Positions 1 through 12,487 of a stretch of 64,000 nt of DNA are shown here, piece by piece. How positions within the stretch are numbered: the first letter of the stretch is position 1; every line of letters begins with the position of its first letter. Source of the DNA: Selaginella moellendorffii (lineage: Eukaryota > Plantae > Lycopodiophyta); the NCBI RefSeq assembly GCF_000143415.4, contig NW_003314267.1:1438100-1502099 (forward strand), read 5' to 3'. Position numbers and translations under genes: made by a program. The notes beneath the pieces are model-generated. The model was not told where the DNA came from and ran no database searches. It saw nothing but the letters and a program-made list of their open reading frames with translations.

Positions 1-396
1 TGCAAAGTAGTGCTAGCCCAATAGTTCCTACACAAGAAACAAATAATAAAACGGGAAAATCTTGCTTTTTGAGGGGAGTAAAATGAATGCTCACCATGCT
101 CTATGAGCTGACTTTGCTGGCTTGGAATAGAGATGGATATGATCTTGTGCCCCAGAAGAAATCTCTCCACCTCCTCAAGGAGGGGCTTGAATCCTGCACG
201 AGAAAAAAAGAACTTGTAAGTCCTACATCATAGCAAGTTTTAGAATCTATGCACTCACCTTTGTGGGGGCAGCAGCCAATTGGATGTATGCTCACAAAAC
301 TTGAGAGTTCCATTGACAAACTCACTTCACCAGCGCAGCTCTCGATTGCAAAGCAAGCAATCTCGTCGGCTCGAGTTTTCCCCTTATGAGCGGCAC
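1..396 (-). CDS. Partial paralog (runs off left edge) of the sirtuin-fragment / proteasome beta5-like chimeric gene
   Basis: Spliced minus-strand reading gives SAAHKGKTRADEIACFAIESCAGE...HPIGCCPHKG|FKPLLEEVERFLLGHKIISISIPSQQSQLIEHG|TIGLALLC, colinear with exons at 5747-6120 (+). Confidence 0.7.
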
Positions 397-1292
397 TGGC
401 AACAGAGGGAAACGATTCAAACGCAAGTCAAAGAATGTAAAATTAATAGTGAGAACAACATAAAACAAGAGATAACTGTAATAATGACAATTGTAATATT
501 AAAGAACACAAAATGTACTAATTTCCTACCTTCCATGCACTTGGTATAATGCTTTAAAATCTTGATGTAAAACTAACGGTGATAACAACTTAAAATAAAA
601 GATAACTGCATTTTAAATGCATCACTAACAATGTCATCGACTGAGCTTAATTAAGAGATTTTCCAAGTTCAATTGCAATATGCTTGTAGTCCTTTTCCTC
701 TCGTTGAGACTTTAGTGTTGAATGAATATCCTTTAGAAATTGAAAGATGTTCTCGTGCTTCGCTACATAAAAGAATTCATGGGAGGTGCTCCAGCTGAGA
801 AACGCAGCAAGTGACGAGAAGTACTTCATCCAACCAGAAGAACATCTGGGCATTCTAGGTTGTGACGGTGATCCAAGCCCCGATGGCGGCTGGAAAGCCA
901 AGGTGGTGGAGGTTTCCAAGCTCTGCCCTCGGTCTCGAGATCCTTCAAAGTCGAGGTTCTTTGAACATTTATGCATTCGAAATCAGTTATCAGCTTAAGA
1001 TCAATAAGTTACATACAAGGATCTCGTGTTTGCATCAAACGCATTGCTTTAAAACTTTCGAGAAGCCCTTGGTGCTCGAGGTTCTTCAGTTCGATACGTA
1101 TACATCTTACATCTGCTTCAGTCAATCCAGATCTGGTGAGACAAAAACCTCAGAACGATATAAAAAAACGTCAGCTTACTTTTTTTCTTGGAGCTTGATG
1201 ATATATCTGGATACTTATAGATCGATCGATGTTCTTGGAGTTTGATGTTATATGCACGATGAATGATATCTTGATCGATCTTAGATTGGCTA

Positions 1293-1760: not shown

Positions 1761-2559
1761 GATTGAAATAAAAGATGGAGTCCTCTTTCTTCCTCTACAG
1801 GCTGACCTTCCTTGCTATTGCTGCTGCCGAGCTTGGAAGTCTCGGCTTCTTCTTGGCCAACTTCTTTGTGGATGGCTCACGTTCCTGAACTCCATTTGCT
1901 TCGTTACATGGATCTCCTTACGTCGTTTTCAAGCTCTCAAATCGCATCAACTGCGTGACATGTATCAGATCATCCCCTACAAACCTTATGGCGAGTAAGG
2001 AGGAATACGACATTTGATAAAAGTTCTCTCCACAGCAATTGTATCAACGTTTACGTGGGATTTGGCGTCCACGGTGCATCTCGGCACTCTATAGCACGGG
2101 CTTCCCTCAGAGTTTGGTGGTTCCTGCAGAGGGAATGAAATTTTTGCTCTCAGCACTCTCATTTACAAAGGAAGAGATCTCGTCAGAGTGAATCGTCCAA
2201 GGACATATTTGATCTGTGTGCTTTGACATCCCCAAGTGCCAAGATATTATCAGAGTGAGAAATTGTTCTTGTCACTGCCTCTCTCTCGGCTTAGACACTT
2301 GGAAGAAAACGCGGACGTCAGCAAAGAGGAAGCATCCAAAGAACTTAACACTCACCTGCATGCGAGATTGTCTTTCCAGTTTCAGAGAAAAATAGCGTCA
2401 AATTGTTGAGCAATCTCCATAAAGATAGCCAGCGTTTTCCACAGCCTACTCGCATTTCTCCCAGCAAAACCTGTACCAGCACTTGTCCATAGCACCCTGT
2501 CACTTTTACACGGCAAGGACATGGAAAGAAGCATGAATGTCGTACCACTAGCTGTTTGT

Positions 2560-2830
2560 AATGAAGTTGAACCATGTGCAACCACTTGAAAACATTTCCC
2601 GACTGTCGAGTGTCTTGTCTCCAAGCCGAAGTTGGACGTTCCTGTACGTAGAACCACTTTTGAGAGACGGCATCAGCTGTAAAGAGCTTGTTACCCCCCA
2701 CCTTTGATTCACACACACTAAACGAGTAGAAGTCCTGGGATTTGTGATGAATTGCCTGAAGACCTATTTTGATTCCATTGGAGTCAAAAGAAAAAAAAGC
2801 TTTCTTTACCTATGCTCTCCATCCGCCCAT
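2560..2830 (+). pseudogene. Degenerate paralog of the unknown gene at 3738-4686
   Basis: VECLVSKP..EPLLRDG..KELVTP..GFVMNCLK..EKKAFF matches AECLVVSEPP..KPLLGDGELGELVTP..GFVMNSLK..EKKAFF on the opposite strand at 4330-4630. Confidence 0.6.
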
Positions 2831-3334
2831 GTCACCAAGTTGCCGTGCGGTCATGGAACTTGATCGAATGTTAGCTCAAAAGCAATGTACAGGGACACAA
2901 CCGAGGTGGTGCCACTCATTGCTTTCAAGAGTTCAAGCAGCATCAGAGGTAAGCTTGTTCACTGTAGATTTCAGAACTTCAACATTCTTACAGGAGCATC
3001 ACCAGCAGCCAAAACATCAACTCACATAAATTGAAAACTACCAAAGCTGTGGATGTGCTAGTAATGGTGTGTTATCCTTTTTCTTTACTTTGTTGTGTGT
3101 TCTTCTGCGGGTGTGTGTCCATGGCGTTAGCAAATTGCAGGCATCTTGGCAAGGGTATTCCCGGGTCCTTGAGAATTCCAGAATGAAATGGTGAGTCTTG
3201 GGGAGCAAAAGGATTGAAAACCTTTTCTCATTCTTTGACGCTCTAGACCTTTTCCGCAGAAGAATACTTGGTAGCAACATGCTGAGAAAAGACGAGTAAA
3301 AAACTAGAGCAGAAAGAGCTAAAGATGAGAGGAT

Positions 3335-3480
3335 TACCTGTTTGTCAAACAATGCAATCTTGATGTTCATCGCGTTTCTTTGCACTCCTTGCTCTTTCAA
3401 GTGCCTTCTTGAACTTCATTCCACCAAAGTCGATGTTTCTGCTGCCGTCAATGACGCACAAATCCCCTCCACAGTGCAAG
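3335..3480 (-). pseudogene. Fragment of a third proteasome beta-like paralog (C-terminal part)
   Basis: CGGDLCVIDGSRNIDFGGMKFKKALERA / VQRNAMNIKIALFDK matches CGGDLCVIDGSENVKLCGGKFKKVLARA..MQRNALNIRTILFEK at 6630-6800. Confidence 0.7.
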
Positions 3481-3737: not shown

Positions 3738-4686
3738 TCAGTTCCATAATACGTGCACGCATTGCAGCTTGACTCTCCCTCCATAAGCAAGAATATTTTC
3801 TCCAATCATAGTCAGTTGTGAGACTAATTTGGTCTGCTGATTCCAATAGTTTTCCTTCTGGAGATACCTATAAATTTCCGACTTCAAAAAAATAAATAAT
3901 AAACAGTGAAAACCTACCTTCTGGACCAAATACCTCACACATACATCGCTCACACATACATCCTCCATATCATCTGCGGTGTGGTAACCATAAATATCAT
4001 CTTCATCTTCTTCTTCATCATCATCCCAAAGAAAGAGAGCCAGAGCCCTCATACCCTTTTCATCGGGAGGGAAGTATTGCCCTCCTTTAACAACAAAGCC
4101 CTCAACCTTCTTCGCTTCAATCTTCACAGGGAAGTAATCCCTCTCAGTCACAGGATCGAAGATGGCTGTCTCCTCCACAGAGAAATCCACCAGATAACCA
4201 GGGTGATTCAATTTCAACAGCATGCTCCGGATAGCTTCTTCCATCCGGACAAACCCTAAAGCCGACCCTAAAAAAGACTGGAGGTTCGAGTCTTGGATTT
4301 CTGGATCTCTTCGAGTCTTGGATTTCTCATTTGAATGAGCTGCAAAGAAAGCCTTTTTTTCTTCGACCGATGCACTCACAGTGGATTTTCAGGGAATTCA
4401 TCACAAATCCTTCGGTGACAAGAACGCAGTCACGGAATGCTACTCACATAAAGTATAATCGGTTAAAGGCCGGGGTGAAGGACTTACACTCGTTTTGTCT
4501 GCGTAAAGATATGGCCGGGGGTGTAACAAGCTCTCCAAGCTCTCCGTCTCCCAAGAGTGGTTTTACGTCAGAACAGGAACGTACAAACTGTATATCCGGC
4601 GGCTCGGAGACAACGAGACACTCGGCAAAATGCCAGCCGGAGGACGGGAATTCTTTTCGAAGCTTCAAAGAAGAAGGGACTCCATT
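3738..4686 (-). pseudogene. Unknown lineage-specific gene, frameshifted (acidic DDDEEEDEDD stretch)
   Basis: 213-aa and 74-aa ORFs in different frames plus an upstream ATG at about 4685. A paralog exists at 2560-2830. No recognisable family. Confidence 0.4.
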
Positions 4687-4895
4687 GTTTCTTTAAAGAG
4701 AATTTAGGGCTTTTGGCGTTGGGAGCTCGCTCGGCCAAGGGAAGCAATAGTTCTTTACTGGGTCGATCGGTTGCGCTTTCGATCACCTACATTGAGGTAT
4801 GGATCCTTACCGGTAGATCACAAGCTGCGAGTAAACATTCCCCGGAATTCGTTTGTGCCGAGTGAGATCTTCGGTTCTTATTTTTCCATGACATA

Positions 4896-4938
4896 GCCAC
4901 GTGGACCGTGACTATGCCACGTGGAATTCACACGTGGC
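4896..4938. promoter_or_regulatory. Three clustered G-box/ABRE-like elements between divergent genes
   Basis: GCCACGTGG at 4896 and 4916, CACGTGGC at 4931, just upstream of ATG 4962. Confidence 0.45.
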
Positions 4939-4961
4939 AGCGTTTAAATATTTTTGGCGGG

Positions 4962-7448
4962 ATGGTGCAAGACGGCTGGGCGCTTGCTTTCTTCTGTGAT
5001 GCGCCTGATGTTCCTATCGTGCTCGAGGTAATATTTTCAATGCTAGCGAATGAAATCCCCTAACAGCAGATCTCTGGTGCTTTTTCATGCAGGGGCAGAG
5101 CCTGCCTTTCATGGACTATCTCAGTAATTCTCTCGTCAAGCCAAGGGAAGGAAACCCCGTTCAGTTCCAGGCGTTGCTGCTCCCCAGCTTGAAATCGCAA
5201 TTGCAGGTTTGCTCTCCAAGGTTTTAAGCCTTTGTAATTGTTTGTTTCAGGGATTATACGACATCAGTGCCTGTAAGCTCGGAGATAACGTTTCCTTGGA
5301 TGGAGCTCCGTTCCAGGCATTGCTGCTCCAGGTTTGTTGCTTTCCATGAACTTAGTGTCATCACAGGACGAGGTTCTAAGTCTTTTGAATTCTTTTGTTC
5401 CAGGGATTATACAACATCAGTGCTTGTAACATTCCCTTGGATGGAGCTCAGTTCCAGGCCTTGCTGCTCCCCAGCTCGAAATTGCAAATGCAGGTTTGTT
5501 AGCTTCATCACAGGACGAGGTTCTAATTTTCTTTAATTCTTTGTTCCAGGAATTATACAACATCAGTGCTCGTATGCTCGGAGATAAAGCTTACTTGGAT
5601 GGAACTCGAGCTGCTGCAAGCATGGTTCAAGAGTCAGATGCGTTTCTCGTCATTGGCTCGACTGTAATGGTTTTACGTCTTGTGAGGTAAGTAGTAGCGT
5701 GACTTTTCTGTGACTTTGTGTGTGAATTGTTTCCCTCTGTCGCCAGTGCCGCTCATAAGGGGAAAACTCGAGCCGACAATATTGCTTGCTTCGAGATGGA
5801 GTGCGCTGGTGAAGTGAGTTTGTCAATGCAACTCTCAAGTCTCTTCCAAGTCGTCAGCATACATCCAATTGGCTGCTGCCCGCACAAAGGCGAGTCACTA
5901 GATTCTGTGAAACTATACAATGTAGGACTTATAGATTTTCTTGTGCAGGATTTAAGCCCCTGGTAGAGAGATATCTTCTGGGGCACAAGATGGTCAGCTT
6001 CTCTATTCCAAGCCAGCACAGGCAGCGCAGCCAGCACGGTGAGCATTCGTTTTATTTCCCTCATGCTTTTCTTATATCTTTTATGTGTAGGAACTATTGG
6101 TCTTGCAGTTTTTTGCAAGCAAGGATTTATAGTCTTGTTCGATTCACTCACAACTGTTACTGGAGACGACGGAGGTGTAGTTGAGAAGCGGGGGAACTTT
6201 AAGAAGATTGTGGAGGTGAGGAGTGAGCCAAGACTTCGAGTTGGCTTTGCTGGCAACGTGGCTGCGTCTTTACAAGTTATTAAACTCTTGCAAGTCAAGC
6301 TAAGTAGGAAAGAGTTAACTCTTCATGAAGCAGCCGAGTTTTTGACGAAGAAGGCAGGCCTTTATGCAACCACAGATCCAGACTTCGTTGCATCGTTCTT
6401 TGTCTACAACGAGAGCATGTTGGTGATGGTCAAGAATGACGGCAATGGGTACAAGACAACGGAAGTTACAAATGAGCATTCCGTAATGGCCATTGGTTCC
6501 GGAGCACAACAAGCACAGGTGATTCTGGGACAACCAGTCCGAGGACAGAACCATGGAAAGGAGGCGAGTGTTGGAGAAGCTCTTTCGCTGGGTCTCGACG
6601 CTTTTGCTCAAGCTTGCATCGAGAATCCCGAATGTGGAGGAGATTTGTGCGTCATCGATGGCAGCGAGAACGTCAAGTTATGTGGAGGGAAGTTCAAGAA
6701 AGTGCTTGCTCGAGCAGTGTCAGATAATTTTTCCTTCCAGTATAAGAAGCGAGCAATGCAACGGAATGCTCTGAACATCAGAACTATATTGTTCGAAAAG
6801 GTAAACCTCTCGTCTTGTTTGAACTTTAGTAACTCATCTTTTCTCAGGAGGAGGAAGCTTTAACTTCTACTGCTTCGGCCAAGGATTCTCCCGTTGAGAA
6901 GGTTGAGAACATCACAGAAGTGGATGGAGTTGTAATGGTCTGTATTTGTGTGGTCTTTTTGCTTGCTTTGCTTCAGCTCACGATCAAAGTGCAGGTGAAA
7001 AAACGAGGTGGCTATATGCTTGCCACAGTAATGGTTTGTGGTGTCTTTTTTTTTTAGTTTGCTTTGCTTTACTTTGGCAATTTACAGGTACAAAACCAAG
7101 GTGCTTTTACGTTTGCCGCTCTTAGCTTCAATTACAAAACAAGGGTAAGGAATTTATATCACATTTATTCTTTAAGGAATTTATTCTTACAGGTTGTGAA
7201 AGAAGCGTTCATTGTCCTGCATGATTGTCTGGTTCTAGCAATGGCAAGTCATGTTTAACTCCAGCAGCTACACTAACATACTTTGTCATGCTGCAAGCAG
7301 TAAAAGAACCTGTATCGCAGATAGAAGAGGAGGCAGTTGCTTCTTTGTTTGTTTGTCTTTTTTGCGTTTGCTCTTGTTCTTGCTGCAGGCCTCTGGAGGA
7401 GGGCACGACGTCGTCGTGAACGTCGGGCAACGCCTTTATTCCAAATAG
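4962..7448 (+). CDS. Multi-exon chimeric protein: SRT2/sirtuin-derived C-terminal fragments + divergent proteasome beta5-like Ntn-hydrolase domain + C-terminal extension (3' end uncertain)
   Basis: An open spliced frame runs from ATG 4962. Sirtuin-like: LGDNV, ESDAFLVIGSTVMVLRLV|SAAHKGKTRAD. Beta-subunit: QHG|TIGLAVFCKQGFIVLFDS..FKKIVEV..GFAG..AIGSG..ECGGDL. Confidence 0.7.
5160..5600 (+). repeat. Three tandem copies of a ~150-bp exon+intron unit
   Basis: Repeated cagGGATTATAC(G/A)ACATCAGTGC...CTTGGATGGAGCTC..TTCCAGGC.TTGCTGCTCC..CAGgtttg; all exons are phase 0. Confidence 0.85.
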
Positions 7449-7460
7449 CGCGCCTTGCTC
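7386..7460 (-). pseudogene. Degenerate copy of thioredoxin-h exon 1
   Basis: caggcctctggaggagggcacgacgt..gtgaacgt..ggcaac..attccaaatagcgcgcct matches 10672-10760. Confidence 0.65.
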
Positions 7461-10231
7461 TTTGTCGGGACTACAAAGAAATAAAGCGTATTATTTTAAG
7501 GGAATTTTTTCTGACCAGCAGCTTCTATCCGCGCTCCGGGAGCTTGGTAAATGCCTCAGTGGCGATTCCAGCGTGGTGTCGGAGCCAGATAACTCTTTGA
7601 TCACTGGAAACTTAAAAACTGTATCCCAAAACAAACAAACAAAATAGAATGCATGTACCAACTGTGATTCCAATGTCAAAACTAGAGCAGATCTGATGGG
7701 ATCTCTCACTCACATCTAATGAAAAATCATAAAAGAATTAGAGGAAAAGGATCTCTTCAAACTCCTATGTGTGACCCTCACATCTAATCAAAAGAAAAGA
7801 GGAAAAGGAACTCTTCCTCCTAGATGTGAGAGAAAGGATCTCTCTCACACATCTAATGACGGTTATATATATTGATTAGTAAGTTTCTTTGTAGTTTTAG
7901 TTAATAGTATCTTTGATTTCATTTTCAAATATAACTTTAGCAAAGAAAGTGGAATCTGAATGGGTCTTTTAGGCTTTTTTTTTTTCAAGAGAAATAATTT
8001 AGATAGCTAAAAACAAATTCAAAATATATTGTCATCACTGAATAATTACATTAAGAGTTTGATATGTAAAATAAAAACTCTATTATATTTCTTGCTCACA
8101 CACTTCTGTAAAATCACAATATAATAGGATATAGCAATAAAAAATATTTATTTTTAATATAAAATATTATTATAGCTAAATTTTATAATGAGGGTGAATA
8201 TTTCCAACCAATTTAATATGATATTGATTACTCTATGATATGGATATTATTAATTTCTTTACTTTTTTATTTATAATTGTTATGATAAATTATATTTATT
8301 TATATATTTAATGAAAATAATATCAAAAGTTTTAATAAATATTTTAGAATTAGTGCTACAATGCAATACACAGTAACTTATATTTAATATACCAAGGACA
8401 TAATAGAATTTTTCATTTCTAAAACCTAATAGAAAAAGATAGAAGGGATCATTTTGTTTACCAAAGAGAATATTGTAATATAAACTAATTTCAACTGCCA
8501 TTAGTAGTTGAAAAGGCCAAGAAAGAAAACTAAAGTCCTTAATTTTCTCTTTACACAATTGTAGTTATCCTTAGATCAGGAACTTATAGCTAAAAAATAA
8601 AGTTATCCTCAATAGCACATTTGTTAACGCTTTTAAGTATCATTTTAGGATGGTGAAAGAGCAATAATTTATGTATGACCATATGGATATATAGCCTTGT
8701 GGATCCAATAGATTTCATTAAAAATACCAAAAACAAAATCAATTTCATCTCATAATTTTCATGCCTATAGATCAAGATTACTTGGTGTTTAAGAAATTTT
8801 ATGTATTTTTATAATTTATAAACACAATATTAAACTAATTTTACATTAAATAAAAATAAGATTAATCTAAATGAAGAATATTTAAGCATCTTTTAGGTAT
8901 ATCCACTACATGAAATTATATAGAAACAAATGTATAATTAGAATCCAAGTATATCATAGGATATACCTCAATCTAATGGCTGTGATTTAATGCTCTTAAA
9001 CTTTATATAATTCGTTGGTATAAAACTGTGGATCCGAACATTATATAAACTAGCTATTTGAGCAAATTTCAAGAAACCCTAACAAGTAACATAAACATCC
9101 TTTTTTCAAAGCAAAATACTTTTCTAAGCTTTCAAGACTTTTTCTTCCAGAACTGGTTGTACAATCTATAAAGTATAAAATAAAGACAATTGCTCCTCGG
9201 GGATGCATTGACTTACAGTTTCTTTGTGTAACTCCAGAAATGCTTAATTTCCTCTATAGACAGAACAAATTATTGCAAAAAGACAAAGACCAGCTGGGAG
9301 GGTAGAGATGAACAGGGCAGCAGTGGAGAGAAAGCCTGTGTTTTGGCCTTTCATATGGATAGCTGTCAATTTCATGTAAGGAACATACCTAGAACATTCA
9401 AGTATATCCTTTAATTCCTCAATCTAGTGCCCATGATCGAACCTAGGTCTTGTTATGATTTCAAATTCATTTGTATAATAGTATTGACATTTCTTATTTA
9501 TCACTAATACAAAATTTATTTAAATTTCCAGAGCAAGTCAAAGAGTGCCAAAGAAGTCCAGAAAAAGGTAATCAGGCTCAATACTAGCTCATTGACTTCA
9601 ATTTTGTTTTTCAAAGAATGCTAGCTATAGTCAATTTGGTAGTCAATTTTACTTATCCTAGTTAATTAAAAATCTCTCTATTTGTTACAAGCAACCAAAC
9701 CATCCTAATGTGGCAATGCCAATGAAGTGGCAATCATCCTCTTGGAGATTACAAAACATCACACACCCACTCGTTCAGATCATGGCTCCAATGCAGTTAG
9801 ATAAGTAATTTAAGTATCGGAGCCCATTCTTCCTACTGACCACACAACCAGATAATTTGAGTTACAAAGATATTAATAGCCACTTTGTATCTAGTTTCAC
9901 ATGCTTCTGAGCCTCATTCTAAAATTCTTTTCTTCTTATAAACACTCATTGGTTTAGGGTTTAGGGTTAAACCTATTATAAAGGCTAACTAGAAGAGGTT
10001 TGTGAACAATGTGGTTTATTCATGTTGGTAAACTTCTTGGAGTTTAGTCATGGATATTATGCATTTGAGCCATGCATATATGATAAGAAAAAAGATATTT
10101 TTTTATTATAAGTTATTTGCACCATTATCAAAAGAAACTACATTATTTATCTTATATTGCAAATAATTCCAATGCTTAATATTGTATGCAAATTATTAAA
10201 CATTAGCCATGGGACCTCTAAACCTATAAAC

Positions 10232-11128: not shown

Positions 11129-12487
11129 CTACTTGAGCCGACGCTTAGATTCGCTGTACAGGATCACTCCAAACACTGTGAGTGTGTAGCCCGCCATGCC
11201 AACCACAGACACGGGGTTCCGGAACAAAAGTATGGACACCACAACGGCCACTGCTCCCTTGGCATTTCCCAGCACCTGTCAAGAACAAAACCATTAAAAG
11301 AGCGAGAGATTGAATTCCACTCAAGATAGGATAGAGAAGGGATAGCGAAACAGAGAAAGAGAAAAGTGATCGATCCTTAGAGCTGTGATTGTTTCGTACC
11401 TGGAGAGTCAAAGCACTCGTGTGCTTGGTGACGAGGAAGTTAGTGAGGTTAACGAAGTAAGCGGTGGCCGAGTTAACCAGGAGCAAGCCGATGATGGAAA
11501 AGTTTGTCCTGGCGAGCGCGATTGTGATGCCCACCACGTTGGGTTCCATGATCAGCGTCGCCGGCAGCAGCAGCACCACGGCGATCGGTGCCATGTAGAG
11601 CAGCAAGTTCATAGAGTTGAGCTTCTCCCTGGAAGTAAAGCAGGACAAAAACCGCATCAGGGAATACATTCGAAGGATGCAAACAAGAATTACATAAAGA
11701 CGAAGAACAGTCGAAGCAAGCAAACGAGAACAGGAAAAAAAATGACGCACAGCAAACAGGAAGAAATTCAGCTGCTAGGAAAGAAGATCGAAGAGCTTCT
11801 TACCCCTCGGAGGACAAGAGAATTCCCTGCAATACCGACTTGAGCGCTCTGGCAGCAGTGGCACTCACGCACATAATGAAACCATAGAGATGAAAGCTTG
11901 GCTCGCCCTGGAAACAAAGATTCCAACAAAAAAACACAAAAACAATGAGTGTGAGATGGATCCAATAAAATACGAGAAACAATGGTGGAAAGATCACTCA
12001 CCCCACTAGCGATGATCACCCCCGTGACAACCGGGACGAGCGTAAGATACGTGACCCAGGCCTCCCTCTTGAGCGTCATGAGATACGCAAACACGGCCGT
12101 GAAGAAGGGGGTGGTAGCTCCCACCGCCTGATTGAACGAGACCGGGAGGTAGCGCAGCGAGATGTTCCCACTCACCACCGACGCGCAAAAGATGATGCTC
12201 AGCGCCGAGATCTTGACGAACTGCGTCCTGGATCTGATAGCCTGCATGGGCACAAGCTTGAGCCACGCGATCCCAATGTAGCTGAAGAGTGCGCACGCCG
12301 TCATGTGGCACATCGTGAGGAAGATAGGGTACTTGAAGCCATAGTTGCTGAGGAGATACTTGTTGAGGAGAAGAACACCGATGTTGGACGAGTACCAGGC
12401 GCCAATCAACCCTACTGTGAAGACGCTGCCCGGCGCCATGGCCTGCGACGCCAGGGAGCCCGATCTTAGCAGCTTCTCCTTCTCCAT
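11129..12487 (-). CDS. TPT-family nucleotide-sugar / sugar-phosphate transporter (UUAT-like), 4 exons
   Basis: [88 protein letters not shown]. Confidence 0.93.

What the first reader, a model, noticed from the sequence alone, without database searches (positions are those of the whole stretch)
4962..7448. Chimeric gene: sirtuin-derived pro-region fused to a divergent proteasome beta5-like protease
Splicing creates QHG|TIGLAVF, mirroring the beta5 autocleavage site HG|TTTLAF. Thr1 (6093), Asp17, a Lys33 equivalent (FKKI) and GSG are retained, whereas D166/S169 appear as N/C. The N-terminal region is built from SRT2-like C-terminal pieces (GDNV, SDAFLVIGS, AAH..TRAD), with one exon triplicated, and there is a novel C-terminal tail. 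The frame appears open and the HG|T site is conserved in the paralog at 1-396. Inference: a lineage-specific, possibly self-processing, non-canonical proteasome-type protease family.
Basis: partly seen in the sequence, partly recalled or inferred. Interest (0 to 1): 0.75.

Follow-up and report, generated by a model that had tools for sequence, protein, structure and literature searches.

The report
Spikemoss chimeric proteasome-like protease gene
A spikemoss (Selaginella) gene that is really transcribed joins scavenged pieces of a lipase gene and a sirtuin gene, in frame, to a very divergent relative of the proteasome's cutting subunit that is known only from this plant; what it does is untested, and the copy on the plant's other chromosome set is already broken.

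Summary
The window is Selaginella moellendorffii. The gene is LOC112344941 / SELMODRAFT_406982, annotated only as uncharacterized. RNA contigs and stranded reads confirm all 11 introns and link the leader exons to the 710-nt exon that starts at G|TIGLAVF. The ORF is open for 560-576 codons.

That exon encodes a proteasome-beta/HslV-fold domain (VIA-align Z 18.6; Foldseek E 3e-10). Gly-1, Thr1, Asp17, the Lys33 equivalent, GxAG and GSG are retained; D166 is N and S169 is C. It has no specific beta5 affinity.

Relatives were found only in S. moellendorffii, among 1.8 billion representatives and 5.8 billion proteins.

Between paralogs the domain is under purifying selection (dN/dS about 0.2, dS about 0.9). 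The leader evolves nearly neutrally (dN/dS 0.83) but keeps its frame.

The leader is mostly GDSL-lipase-derived, including the triplicated exon and the "QHG". Only about 60-70 residues look sirtuin-like.

The other haplotype's allele has a 26-nt frameshifting deletion. Allelic changes in the domain are 7 nonsynonymous to 1 synonymous.

The neighbouring "paralog" is a truncated pseudogene.

The scan had already met this family on other DNA of this genome, as PPR and fumarase fusions.

Self-processing and protease activity are inferred, not shown.

The parts
4896..5027 (+). Exon 1. The 5' end is not mapped; RNA contigs begin at 4896. In-frame ATGs lie at 4914 and 4962. Three G-box CACGTG motifs lie at 4899-4937. 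The origin of the sequence is unknown.
5093..5206 (+). Exon 2, derived from a GDSL lipase. It matches residues 173-203 of SELMODRAFT_230518 (DYL..REG.P.QFQALLL..LKSQLQ).
5251..5493 (+). Exons 3 (5251-5331) and 4 (5404-5493). They are tandem duplicates of the unit that spans the GDSL 'LYNISA..' piece, the start of the sirtuin-like 'GDNV.LDGA' piece and the GDSL 'QFQALLL' piece.
5550..5686 (+). Exon 5. It begins with the end of the GDSL piece (ELYNISARML) and continues with the sirtuin-like piece (GDKAYLDGTRAAASMVQESDAFLVIGSTVMVLRLV).
5747..5889 (+). Exon 6. It holds the end of the sirtuin-like piece (AAHKGKTRAD...GEV) followed by the GDSL piece (VSIHPIGCCPHK). Its donor is GC at 5890. Intron 6 itself is decayed GDSL coding sequence (GESLDSVKLYNVGL).
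5949..6038 (+). Exon 7, the GDSL-derived end of the leader (FKPLVERYLLGHK...IPSQH(RQRSQH)G). It supplies the first base of the Gly-1 codon. The RefSeq model's start ATG is at 5990. The other haplotype lacks 6009-6034, a 26-nt frameshifting deletion.
6091..6800 (+). Exon 8, the whole proteasome-beta/HslV-fold domain. Thr1 is at 6093-6095. Asp17, the Lys33 equivalent (K38), GFAG and IGSG are present. The motif ENPECGG carries D166N and S169C.
6848..7258 (+). Tail exons 9-12 (6848-6937, 6995-7033, 7088-7144, 7193 onward). The stop is at 7256-7258. The tail contains a duplicated mini-exon-plus-intron unit and matches no known family.
7259..7505 (+). 3' UTR, covered by RNA contigs to about 7505. 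JGI's extra intron and its terminal coding piece 7389-7448 are among neither the listed RNA joints nor the contigs.
1..435 (-). Inverted partial copy ('copy B'). It covers the equivalents of exons 6 and 7 and the first codons of exon 8, at 76.5% identity to 5706-6117. It lacks exons 1-5 and abuts an assembly gap. Its counterpart in the other haplotype is a pseudogene.
3204..3473 (-). Detached fragment of the C-terminal part of a protease-like exon. It is 77% identical to 6633-6716 and 81% identical to the L001 paralog.

Best explanation
This is an expressed chimeric gene of Selaginella moellendorffii.

Its core is one 710-nt exon. That exon encodes a very divergent proteasome-beta/HslV-fold N-terminal-nucleophile (Ntn) hydrolase domain, from a small family seen only in this species.

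In this subclade the exon acquired a splice acceptor inside the Gly-1 codon. It is spliced in frame behind a leader of about 270 codons. The leader is assembled from fragments of a GDSL-lipase gene, with an SRT2-like sirtuin fragment inserted into them and one unit triplicated.

What is shown:
- the transcript and all its splice joints;
- the open frame;
- the fold;
- the retained Gly-1/Thr1/Asp17/Lys33/GxAG/GSG set, with D166N and S169C;
- long-term purifying selection on the domain;
- near-neutral amino-acid change in the leader, with its reading frame nevertheless kept.

What is inferred:
- Translation starts at 4914 or 4962.
- The mosaic leader acts as an oversized, sequence-tolerant pro-region.
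- The leader is removed by autolysis between Gly-1 and Thr1, exposing Thr1 as the nucleophile.
- Because of D166N, the product is probably an attenuated peptidase or amidase.

The locus itself seems to be losing constraint. The other haplotype's allele is frameshifted, and the allelic differences in the domain are almost all nonsynonymous.

RNA:
- Spliced contigs from two runs and stranded reads from two further runs give the joints 5027/5093, 5206/5251, 5331/5404, 5493/5550, 5686/5747, 5889/5949 (GC-AG), 6038/6091, 6800/6848, 6937/6995, 7033/7088 and 7144/7193.
- The contigs overlap over 4896..5634, 5606..6251 and 6224..7310.
- First mates lie on the minus strand throughout, as expected for an RNA from the + strand.

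Open frame:
- The frame is open from 4896 to 7258.

Fold:
- Pfam Proteasome PF00227 scores 18.9 bits here, below the cut-off of 22.4. The paralogs score 27.3 and 29.9 bits.
- A family profile searched against the PDB gives 23 hits, all proteasome or HslV. The best is an archaeal beta subunit, E 3.6e-4.
- NCBIfam's HslV model matches at E 2e-6, and the archaeal beta model at E 1.7e-6.
- The AlphaFold2 model has pLDDT 70.8 and pTM 0.77.
- Foldseek's top hit is HslV, E 3.3e-10, TM 0.72.
- VIA-align gives Z 18.6, rmsd 2.8 A over 178-190 residues. Model residue 11 (Thr1) aligns on residue 1 of mature beta subunits.
- The ESM Atlas structure search returns only proteasome clusters.

Conserved residues:
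- The family alignment shows them.

Selection:
- Exon 8: dN 0.17, dS 0.92, dN/dS 0.17-0.24.
- Leader: dN 0.12, dS 0.15, dN/dS 0.83.
- Nine of 10 leader-exon indels are multiples of 3, against 3 of 10 intron indels.
- The paralogs have Ile where the RefSeq model's start Met lies, so they need an upstream start.
- The second paralog is also transcribed: the unaligned read ends at 3473 match L001 13096 exactly.

Literature:
- Yeast beta5-D166N still removes its propeptide but has drastically reduced activity (PMC4792962).
Against: - Nothing shows that the protein exists, is cleaved or is active.
- D166N and S169C alter the second catalytic triad.
- A leader of about 270 residues is far longer than any known beta-subunit propeptide.
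- The window copy falls below Pfam's gathering score.
- The hap-2 allele carries a 26-nt frameshift between the leader and the domain, and both alleles are transcribed.
- Allelic differences in exon 8 are 7 nonsynonymous to 1 synonymous. This points to recent relaxation of constraint, or to diversifying selection.
- Expression is low: depth 1.5-12 in 12% of a 10.8-Gb run.
- Copy B and other family copies are decaying (earlier scan notes).
Confidence: 0.55

Rival explanations
1. The gene is a transcribed chimeric gene in early pseudogenisation. The protease-like domain was functional in an ancestor, and perhaps still is in the paralog LOC9635678 / SELMODRAFT_422380. This locus no longer makes a useful protein, and the spliced RNA is a leftover.
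For: - The hap-2 allele is frameshifted by a 26-nt deletion that is absent from both the window allele and the paralog.
- Allelic changes in exon 8 are 7 nonsynonymous to 1 synonymous, dN/dS about 1.
- The window allele carries derived R>G, K>E and L>V changes relative to the paralogs.
- D166N is present.
- The window copy scores below Pfam's threshold.
- The neighbouring copy B and a detached fragment are dead.
- Expression is low.
Against: - The window allele keeps 560-576 codons open across 12 exons.
- All family-invariant residues are intact in both alleles.
- Leader indels keep the frame.
- dN/dS of 0.2 over dS of 0.9 implies constraint for most of the history of both copies.
Confidence: 0.3
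2. The protein is the short RefSeq form (336 aa). It starts at ATG 5990 and has a 17-residue propeptide, MVSFSIPSQHRQRSQHG. The upstream mosaic exons are then only a long 5' leader that carries an upstream ORF.
For: - This is the RefSeq Gnomon model XP_024526380.1.
- The leader's amino-acid sequence evolves nearly neutrally, dN/dS 0.83.
- Read depth rises from 1.5 over exons 1-3 to 8-12 over exon 8. That would fit some shorter transcripts.
Against: - The upstream ATGs at 4914 and 4962 are in the same frame with no stop, so a scanning ribosome would make the long form.
- Splice-joint read counts are similar along the gene.
- The paralogs have Ile at that Met.
- Leader indels preserve the frame.
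Confidence: 0.12
3. The domain is a non-catalytic proteasome-fold module: a pseudo-protease, scaffold or assembly factor. It is never processed, and the conserved Gly-Thr is structural.
For: - S169C is present in the whole family and D166N in this subclade.
- Leaders are long and of unrelated origin in different copies.
- Inactive proteasome-fold proteins are well known: alpha subunits and beta3, beta4, beta6 and beta7 (established knowledge).
Against: - Gly-1, Thr1, Asp17, Lys33, Gly47 and Ser129 are all invariant across copies only 36-40% identical. Inactive beta subunits usually lose Thr1 or Lys33.
- D166 is kept in the three more distant members.
Confidence: 0.2
4. The family derives from organellar HslV and serves as the partner of the nuclear-encoded HslU that the scan noted elsewhere in this genome.
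For: - The best single-sequence hits of the window copy are HslV: PDB E 0.015 and NCBIfam E 2e-6.
- Foldseek's top hits are HslV, TM 0.72.
- GNFKKI and GFAG resemble HslV's GNVKKV and GFAG.
This was not checked here.
Against: - Scores are far below the HslV equivalog cut-offs: 27.6 against 137 bits.
- The more distant members hit archaeal beta models instead.
- The D/N-x-x-C-G-G motif is beta/Anbu-like and does not align in HslV.
- No targeting peptide is evident.
- The domain is about 60 residues longer than HslV.
Confidence: 0.08
5. The mosaic results from gene-fragment capture by a transposon (Helitron or Pack-MULE type). The chimeric transcript is then a by-product with no host function.
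For: - Fragments of at least two unrelated genes lie in one orientation with introns kept.
- Other family copies carry PPR or fumarase pieces (earlier notes).
- Inverted and partial copies lie nearby.
Against: - No terminal inverted repeats or other element ends were found around the 2.6-kb duplicated block.
- Copy number is very low.
- The domain is under purifying selection and the leader frame is maintained.
Confidence: 0.07

Closest known systems
20S proteasome beta subunits (Pfam PF00227, MEROPS family T1), archaeal and eukaryotic
   Same: - The fold is the same: VIA-align Z 17-18.6, rmsd about 2.8-3 A over about 180-190 residues.
- Gly-1|Thr1 sits at the equivalent position.
- Asp17, Lys33, Gly47 and Ser129 are present, as is the D-x-x-S-G-G region.
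- The active N-terminus has to be exposed by removing a pro-region.
   Different: - Sequence identity is only 11-22%.
- No 20S subunit reaches E 1e-3 in an exhaustive single-sequence search.
- S169 is Cys family-wide and D166 is Asn in this subclade.
- There is a 5-residue insertion before Lys33.
- The leader is about 270 residues long and is built from unrelated gene fragments.
- There is an extra C-terminal tail of about 85 residues.
- Nothing shows incorporation into a 20S particle.
- There is no specific beta5 affinity.
HslV (ClpQ), the bacterial and organellar proteasome homologue
   Same: - It gives the best single-sequence and Foldseek matches.
- The GNxKK(I/V) and GFAG motifs are shared.
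- It is likewise encoded as a single unit.
   Different: - Scores are far below the HslV equivalog cut-offs.
- The domain is about 60 residues longer.
- It carries the beta-type C-G-G motif.
- HslV has no propeptide beyond Met, or a transit peptide in organelles.
Anbu, BPH and the further prokaryotic proteasome homologues (Fuchs, Alva and Lupas 2021, PMC8665760)
   Same: They are also divergent stand-alone members of the proteasome-like superfamily that keep the Thr1/Lys33 centre. Anbu chains are among the Foldseek matches.
   Different: The families the paper's text describes are prokaryotic. The paper mentions no plant or Selaginella member. This family is nuclear, intron-flanked, and seen in a single lycophyte species.
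Young chimeric genes made by exon shuffling or gene-fragment recruitment (general class)
   Same: Exons scavenged from a GDSL lipase gene and a sirtuin gene supply the 5' exons and the start codon for a pre-existing domain exon. Tandem exon duplication occurred after the fusion.
   Different: Here the recruited part shows almost no amino-acid constraint but does keep its frame. The junction falls exactly at the Gly-1|Thr1 autolysis site of an Ntn hydrolase.

Membership tests
Proteasome-like superfamily (Pfam PF00227 / MEROPS T1) | Profile match above Pfam's gathering score (22.4 bits) | tested here: inconclusive
   The window copy scores 18.9-19.1 bits, E 1e-3, below the cut-off. Its paralogs P0004 and P0005 score 27.3 and 29.9 bits, above it. 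All 23 PDB hits of the family profile are proteasome or HslV chains.
Proteasome-like superfamily (Pfam PF00227 / MEROPS T1) | Four-layer alpha-beta-beta-alpha Ntn-hydrolase fold of proteasome subunits | tested here: met
   The AlphaFold2 model has pLDDT 70.8 and pTM 0.77. Foldseek gives at least 500 matches at E 1e-3 or better; all 50 rows shown are proteasome-family chains, top E 3.3e-10. VIA-align gives Z 18.6. The ESM Atlas returns only proteasome clusters.
Proteasome-like superfamily (Pfam PF00227 / MEROPS T1) | N-terminal nucleophile Thr1 preceded by Gly-1, plus Asp/Glu17 and Lys33 | tested here: met
   These residues are invariant in the 7-sequence family alignment. Thr1 superposes on residue 1 of mature beta subunits. 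G-T aligns to G-T of the A. fulgidus beta subunit.
Proteasome-like superfamily (Pfam PF00227 / MEROPS T1) | Second triad: Ser129, Asp166 and Ser169 | tested here: not met
   Ser129 is present (IGSG). The Asp166 equivalent is Asn in this subclade and Asp in P0008, P0009 and P0010. The Ser169 equivalent is Cys in all members.
Proteasome-like superfamily (Pfam PF00227 / MEROPS T1) | Autocatalytic propeptide removal, peptidase activity and ring assembly | not testable with these tools
   This needs biochemistry. The only bearing evidence is from the literature: yeast beta5-D166N still autolyses but is weakly active (PMC4792962).
Eukaryotic 20S beta5 (PBE/PSMB5) orthologue | Specific, best and significant similarity to beta5 over other T1 members | tested here: not met
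   The best hits vary between HslV, archaeal beta, beta1, beta5 and beta6. The exhaustive phmmer search found no 20S subunit at E 1e-3 or better. His-2 comes from the GDSL-derived exon.
HslV | Match to the HslV equivalog models at their cut-offs (137 and 157.75 bits) | tested here: not met
   The scores are 27.6 and 25.8 bits.
Sirtuin (SIR2, PF02146), for the leader piece only | A recognisable SIR2 domain with a catalytic core | tested here: not met
   Pfam gives no SIR2 hit at E 10 or better. Only a stretch of about 70 residues resembles the C-terminal Rossmann part. The top three PDB hits of the paralog's piece are Sir2Tm, E 0.17. The ESM Atlas gives a feature score of 0.93 to SIR2 clusters and TM 0.79 to a Streptophyta SIR2 cluster. 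A four-sequence profile did not recover sirtuins. It is a fragment, not a sirtuin.
GDSL lipase (PF00657), for the leader | A full domain with the catalytic blocks I (GDS) and V (DxxH) | tested here: not met
   Only GDSL residues 173-270 are matched; the stretch to about 289, including the 'QHG', aligns only weakly (E 2.4). Pfam finds no GDSL domain in the leader. The homology itself is significant, E 6e-7 and 9e-12.

The most novel reading that the evidence does not exclude
Selaginella carries a eukaryote-born, so far undescribed branch of proteasome homologues. In this reading its members are made as fusion precursors with arbitrary, scavenged N-terminal 'pro-regions'. They cut themselves free at Gly-1|Thr1 and assemble into their own small self-compartmentalising threonine protease. 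That protease might work with the plant's organellar HslU-type unfoldase. It would be a proteasome-like system in a land plant outside both the 20S particle and canonical HslV.
Probability: 0.2. Interest if true: 0.75.

Novelty: new variant of a known kind. Interest (0 to 1): 0.55.

Why it matters
The proteasome homologues met in this work outside the 20S particle (HslV, Anbu, BPH, connectase and the families of PMC8665760) are prokaryotic or organellar. A nuclear, spliced, species-restricted branch that has stayed under purifying selection would be a new data point for how the fold diversifies.

The locus also shows unusually clearly how a new gene is put together. A GDSL-lipase gene and a sirtuin gene donated exons that serve as a frame-keeping but otherwise unconstrained leader. 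The join falls exactly at the autolysis site of an Ntn hydrolase.

If the leader is really cut off, the precursor would tolerate almost any N-terminal cargo, which could be useful as a self-cleaving tag.

The frameshifted second allele gives a natural loss-of-function control.

If the gene is instead decaying, the case is an ordinary birth-and-death episode of a small lineage-specific family.

Tried and rejected
- Pfam and PDB searches of the whole leader (JGI model residues 1-205) found no sirtuin and no GDSL domain. The origin only became clear from the word search, which returned a GDSL lipase.
- A four-sequence profile of the sirtuin-like piece did not recover sirtuins. Its best real hit was the middle domain of acetolactate synthase, E 0.4, which to my knowledge belongs to the same broad NAD/FAD-binding fold class. 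An acetolactate-synthase origin was considered. It ranks below sirtuin because the single-sequence PDB search and the Atlas searches both point to SIR2.
- The first AlphaFold2 run, with 4 close paralogs, gave pLDDT 46 and was not used for conclusions.
- Exact-sequence look-ups for P0001, P0006 and P0005 found no record. The hap-1 DNA of paralog LOC9635678 could therefore not be compared.
- I first took copy B at 1-435 to be LOC9635678. It is not: identity is only 84% over residues 210-258. It is a separate truncated copy.
- A search for inverted repeats as transposon ends found only the paralog arms.
- Literature searches found nothing on these loci or on HslV in Selaginella.
- The idea that a conserved intron at Gly-1 makes the domain a shuffling-ready exon family-wide was rejected. 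P0008 and P0010 have no intron there.
Full report
**Identity and public models**

The large exon translates to a 237-residue stretch. It is 100% identical to XP_024526380.1, "uncharacterized protein LOC112344941" of Selaginella moellendorffii.

The same 90%-identity cluster holds the older JGI model EFJ32954.1, SELMODRAFT_406982, 557 aa. The RefSeq model, 336 aa, starts at ATG 5990 and has a 17-residue stretch before Thr1.

Neither model has a name or a Pfam assignment. No paper in the library mentions these loci.

**Transcript**

I laid two runs of assembled RNA contigs and two runs of raw stranded RNA-seq on window:2400-8300. Eleven introns are supported by joints in both contig sets and by spliced reads in at least one of the two raw-read runs. 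Ten are GT-AG and one is GC-AG.

The exons are:
- from 4896 or earlier to 5027
- 5093-5206
- 5251-5331
- 5404-5493
- 5550-5686
- 5747-5889
- 5949-6038
- 6091-6800
- 6848-6937
- 6995-7033
- 7088-7144
- 7193 to about 7505

Overlapping contigs (4896..5634, 5606..6251, 6224..7310) tie the leader exons to the protease-like exon. Joint counts are similar along the gene.

Two corrections to the public models follow:
- Exon 6 ends at 5889, not about 5808. This adds 27 in-frame codons.
- The stop is at 7256-7258, as in RefSeq. JGI's last intron is not among the listed joints (one joint was not shown), and the contigs run unspliced through that stretch.

Joining the exons in a local script, only to check the frame, gives an ORF open from 4896 to the stop. 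That is 576 codons from ATG 4914 or 560 from ATG 4962.

**The domain**

Sequence evidence:
- Pfam Proteasome scores 18.9 bits for this copy, below the cut-off of 22.4. The paralogs score 27.3 and 29.9 bits.
- NCBIfam gives HslV at E 2e-6 for this copy. It gives archaeal beta at E 1.7e-6 and 5e-5 for the distant family members. All scores are far below the equivalog cut-offs.
- A 7-sequence family profile hits only proteasome or HslV chains in the PDB. The best is the M. jannaschii beta subunit, E 3.6e-4.

Structure evidence:
- With that alignment AlphaFold2 reaches pLDDT 70.8 and pTM 0.77.
- Foldseek's top hit is HslV, E 3.3e-10, TM 0.72. All of the at least 500 matches reach E 1e-3 or better, and all 50 rows shown are proteasome-family chains.
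- VIA-align gives Z 17-18.6 at about 2.8-3 A over about 180-190 residues against beta1, beta5 and beta6 subunits. Model residue 11 (Thr1) lies on residue 1 of the mature subunits.
- The ESM Atlas returns only proteasome clusters.

Residues:
- Invariant in the family are Gly-1, Thr1, Ile2, Gly3, Asp17, Ser18, the Lys33 equivalent, GxAG, IGSG and C..CGG.
- The Asp166 equivalent is Asp in the distant members and Asn in this subclade.
- The Ser169 equivalent is Cys throughout.
- In yeast beta5, D166N still allows propeptide removal but strongly reduces activity (PMC4792962).

The "beta5-like" label is not: there is no specific beta5 affinity.

**Range of the family**

An exhaustive phmmer search of 1.84 billion representative proteins found five proteins at E 1e-3 or better. 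All are from S. moellendorffii.

A profile-seeded word search of 5.8 billion proteins added nothing from any other organism.

The distant members P0008, P0009 and P0010 carry different leaders. The earlier scan notes call them PPR-derived; I did not check that. They have no intron before Thr1.

The scan had already met this family elsewhere in this genome, as PPR-fragment and fumarase fusions.

**The leader**

A word search with residues 1-205 of the JGI model returned the paralogs and a GDSL lipase, SELMODRAFT_230518 (PF00657, E 1e-32). The matches to that lipase are:
- Residues 30-70 of the JGI model are 73% identical to lipase residues 173-213, E 6e-7.
- The triplicated exon is this same lipase stretch.
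- A second block, VSIHPIGCCPH..GECID..YNVG.K.LL.EVER, matches lipase residues 215-270 at E 9e-12 in the paralog. In the window itself the match is at E 1e-3.
- The leader's last residues..IPSQ..HG, line up with the lipase's NNPSQHGF, though that local alignment is weak (E 2.4).

So the His-Gly in front of Thr1 is most simply lipase sequence. Only the Gly is a family feature.

Between the two lipase blocks lies a piece of about 60-70 residues (GDNV.LDG..AA..VQESDAFLVIGS...RLV.AAHKGKTRAD...GEV). The evidence on its origin is:
- The paralog's version has Sir2Tm as its top three PDB hits, E 0.17, aligned on the FGE.P...GSSL.V.PA motif.
- The ESM Atlas places it next to SIR2 clusters, with a feature score of 0.93 and TM 0.79 to a Streptophyta SIR2 cluster.
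- Pfam and a small profile did not confirm this.

I take the sirtuin origin of this piece as probable. The statement that the pro-region as a whole is sirtuin-derived is wrong.

**Selection**

The hap-2 paralog SELMODRAFT_422380 (locus L001) shares the whole 2.6-kb block with this gene.

| Region | dN | dS | dN/dS |
|---|---|---|---|
| Exon 8 | 0.17 | 0.92 | 0.17-0.24, uniform along the exon |
| Leader exons | 0.12 | 0.15 | 0.83 |

The introns in the leader region are as similar between the copies as the exons are. The leader was therefore exchanged or homogenised much more recently than exon 8, and its residues are barely constrained.

Even so, 9 of 10 leader-exon indels are multiples of three, against 3 of 10 intron indels (one-sided hypergeometric p about 0.01, computed by hand). 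The paralogs also lack the internal Met. Together this argues that the leader is translated as a frame-keeping spacer.

The paralog is transcribed too. Unaligned read ends at 3473 match L001 13096-13125 exactly.

**Signs of decay at this locus**

- The hap-2 allele (L002) lacks window 6009-6034. These 26 nt are present in both the window allele and the paralog. The deletion puts the leader out of frame with exon 8.
- RNA reads carry both alleles' variants and both versions of the exon 7-8 joint.
- Between the alleles, exon 8 differs by 7 nonsynonymous changes and 1 synonymous change. The leader differs by 1 nonsynonymous and 5 synonymous changes, the synonymous ones clustered at 5802-5965.
- The inverted copy at 435..1 lacks exons 1-5 and abuts a 2576-N assembly gap. 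In hap-2 it has a deletion that removes the Lys33 region, plus a stop and a frameshift.
- A detached C-terminal fragment lies at 3204-3473.

**Reading**

Shown:
- an expressed, spliced, open chimeric gene;
- a proteasome-fold domain with a nearly complete catalytic set;
- a domain that has long been constrained;
- a leader built from GDSL-lipase and sirtuin fragments.

Inferred:
- the long precursor is made;
- it is cut at Gly-1|Thr1;
- the product is a weak threonine hydrolase.

The main rival is that this particular locus is sliding into pseudogenisation while its paralog carries the function.

**Limits**

- There was no plant genome collection to search.
- The transcript-supported joined protein was not sent to any search or folding tool. 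The public models P0001 and P0002 and single exons were used by reference instead.
- The hap-1 DNA of the paralog was unavailable.

Noticed in passing
window:3400-4480 (minus strand): A strongly expressed spliced gene lies head-to-head with the finding. Read depth is about 50 and contig depth 300-400. Its 213-aa ORF (3738-4379) ends in an acidic DDDEEEDEDD stretch and has no Pfam family. JGI merges it with downstream fragments into a 350-aa model.
   Followed up: partly
window:1 (= GL377571.1 about 1,438,100); L003:2512-5087: A 2576-N assembly gap ends exactly one base before the window starts. The inverted copy's protease exon is therefore unseen in this haplotype.
   Followed up: yes
window:4899-4937: Three G-box/ABRE-like CACGTG motifs lie within 40 bp. 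They sit just upstream of, or inside, the start of the transcript. The block is conserved in the paralog (91% over 4836-4961).
   Followed up: no
window:6192-6795 against L002: Five of the eight allelic differences in exon 8 are G>A changes (window allele to hap-2 allele). All five fall at first codon positions: GGG>AGG twice, GAG>AAG, GGA>AGA and GAA>AAA. The bias is unexplained.
   Followed up: no
window:5778-5965: Five allelic SNVs cluster in 190 bp next to the 26-nt deletion, against one in the preceding 800 bp or so of leader exons. Four of the five are synonymous in the leader frame. This looks like a gene-conversion tract from another copy.
   Followed up: partly
window:2871-3096 (+) and 2402-2876 (-): Pieces 95.6% and 76% identical to the tail and to the 5' region of the L001 paralog gene lie scrambled between copy B and the expressed neighbour. 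The interval is a patchwork of family debris.
   Followed up: partly
L004:6481-7102 (-) and 780-1037 (-): Further protease-like copies flank P0010 (SELMODRAFT_404515), at 57% and 41% identity to it. Family members tend to sit in small clusters together with inverted partial copies.
   Followed up: no
window:10232-10833, 11129-12487 and onward (minus strand): Ordinary neighbours lie downstream: thioredoxin, a TPT/UAA sugar-phosphate transporter, a Cys/Met-metabolism PLP enzyme and GrpE. Their order is the same in both haplotypes.
   Followed up: partly
UniProt D8SJ71 (P0008): UniProt labels this family member 'Glutamine amidotransferase type-2 domain-containing protein'. That is an automatic label for a different class of Ntn hydrolase and is likely a mis-assignment.
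   Followed up: no
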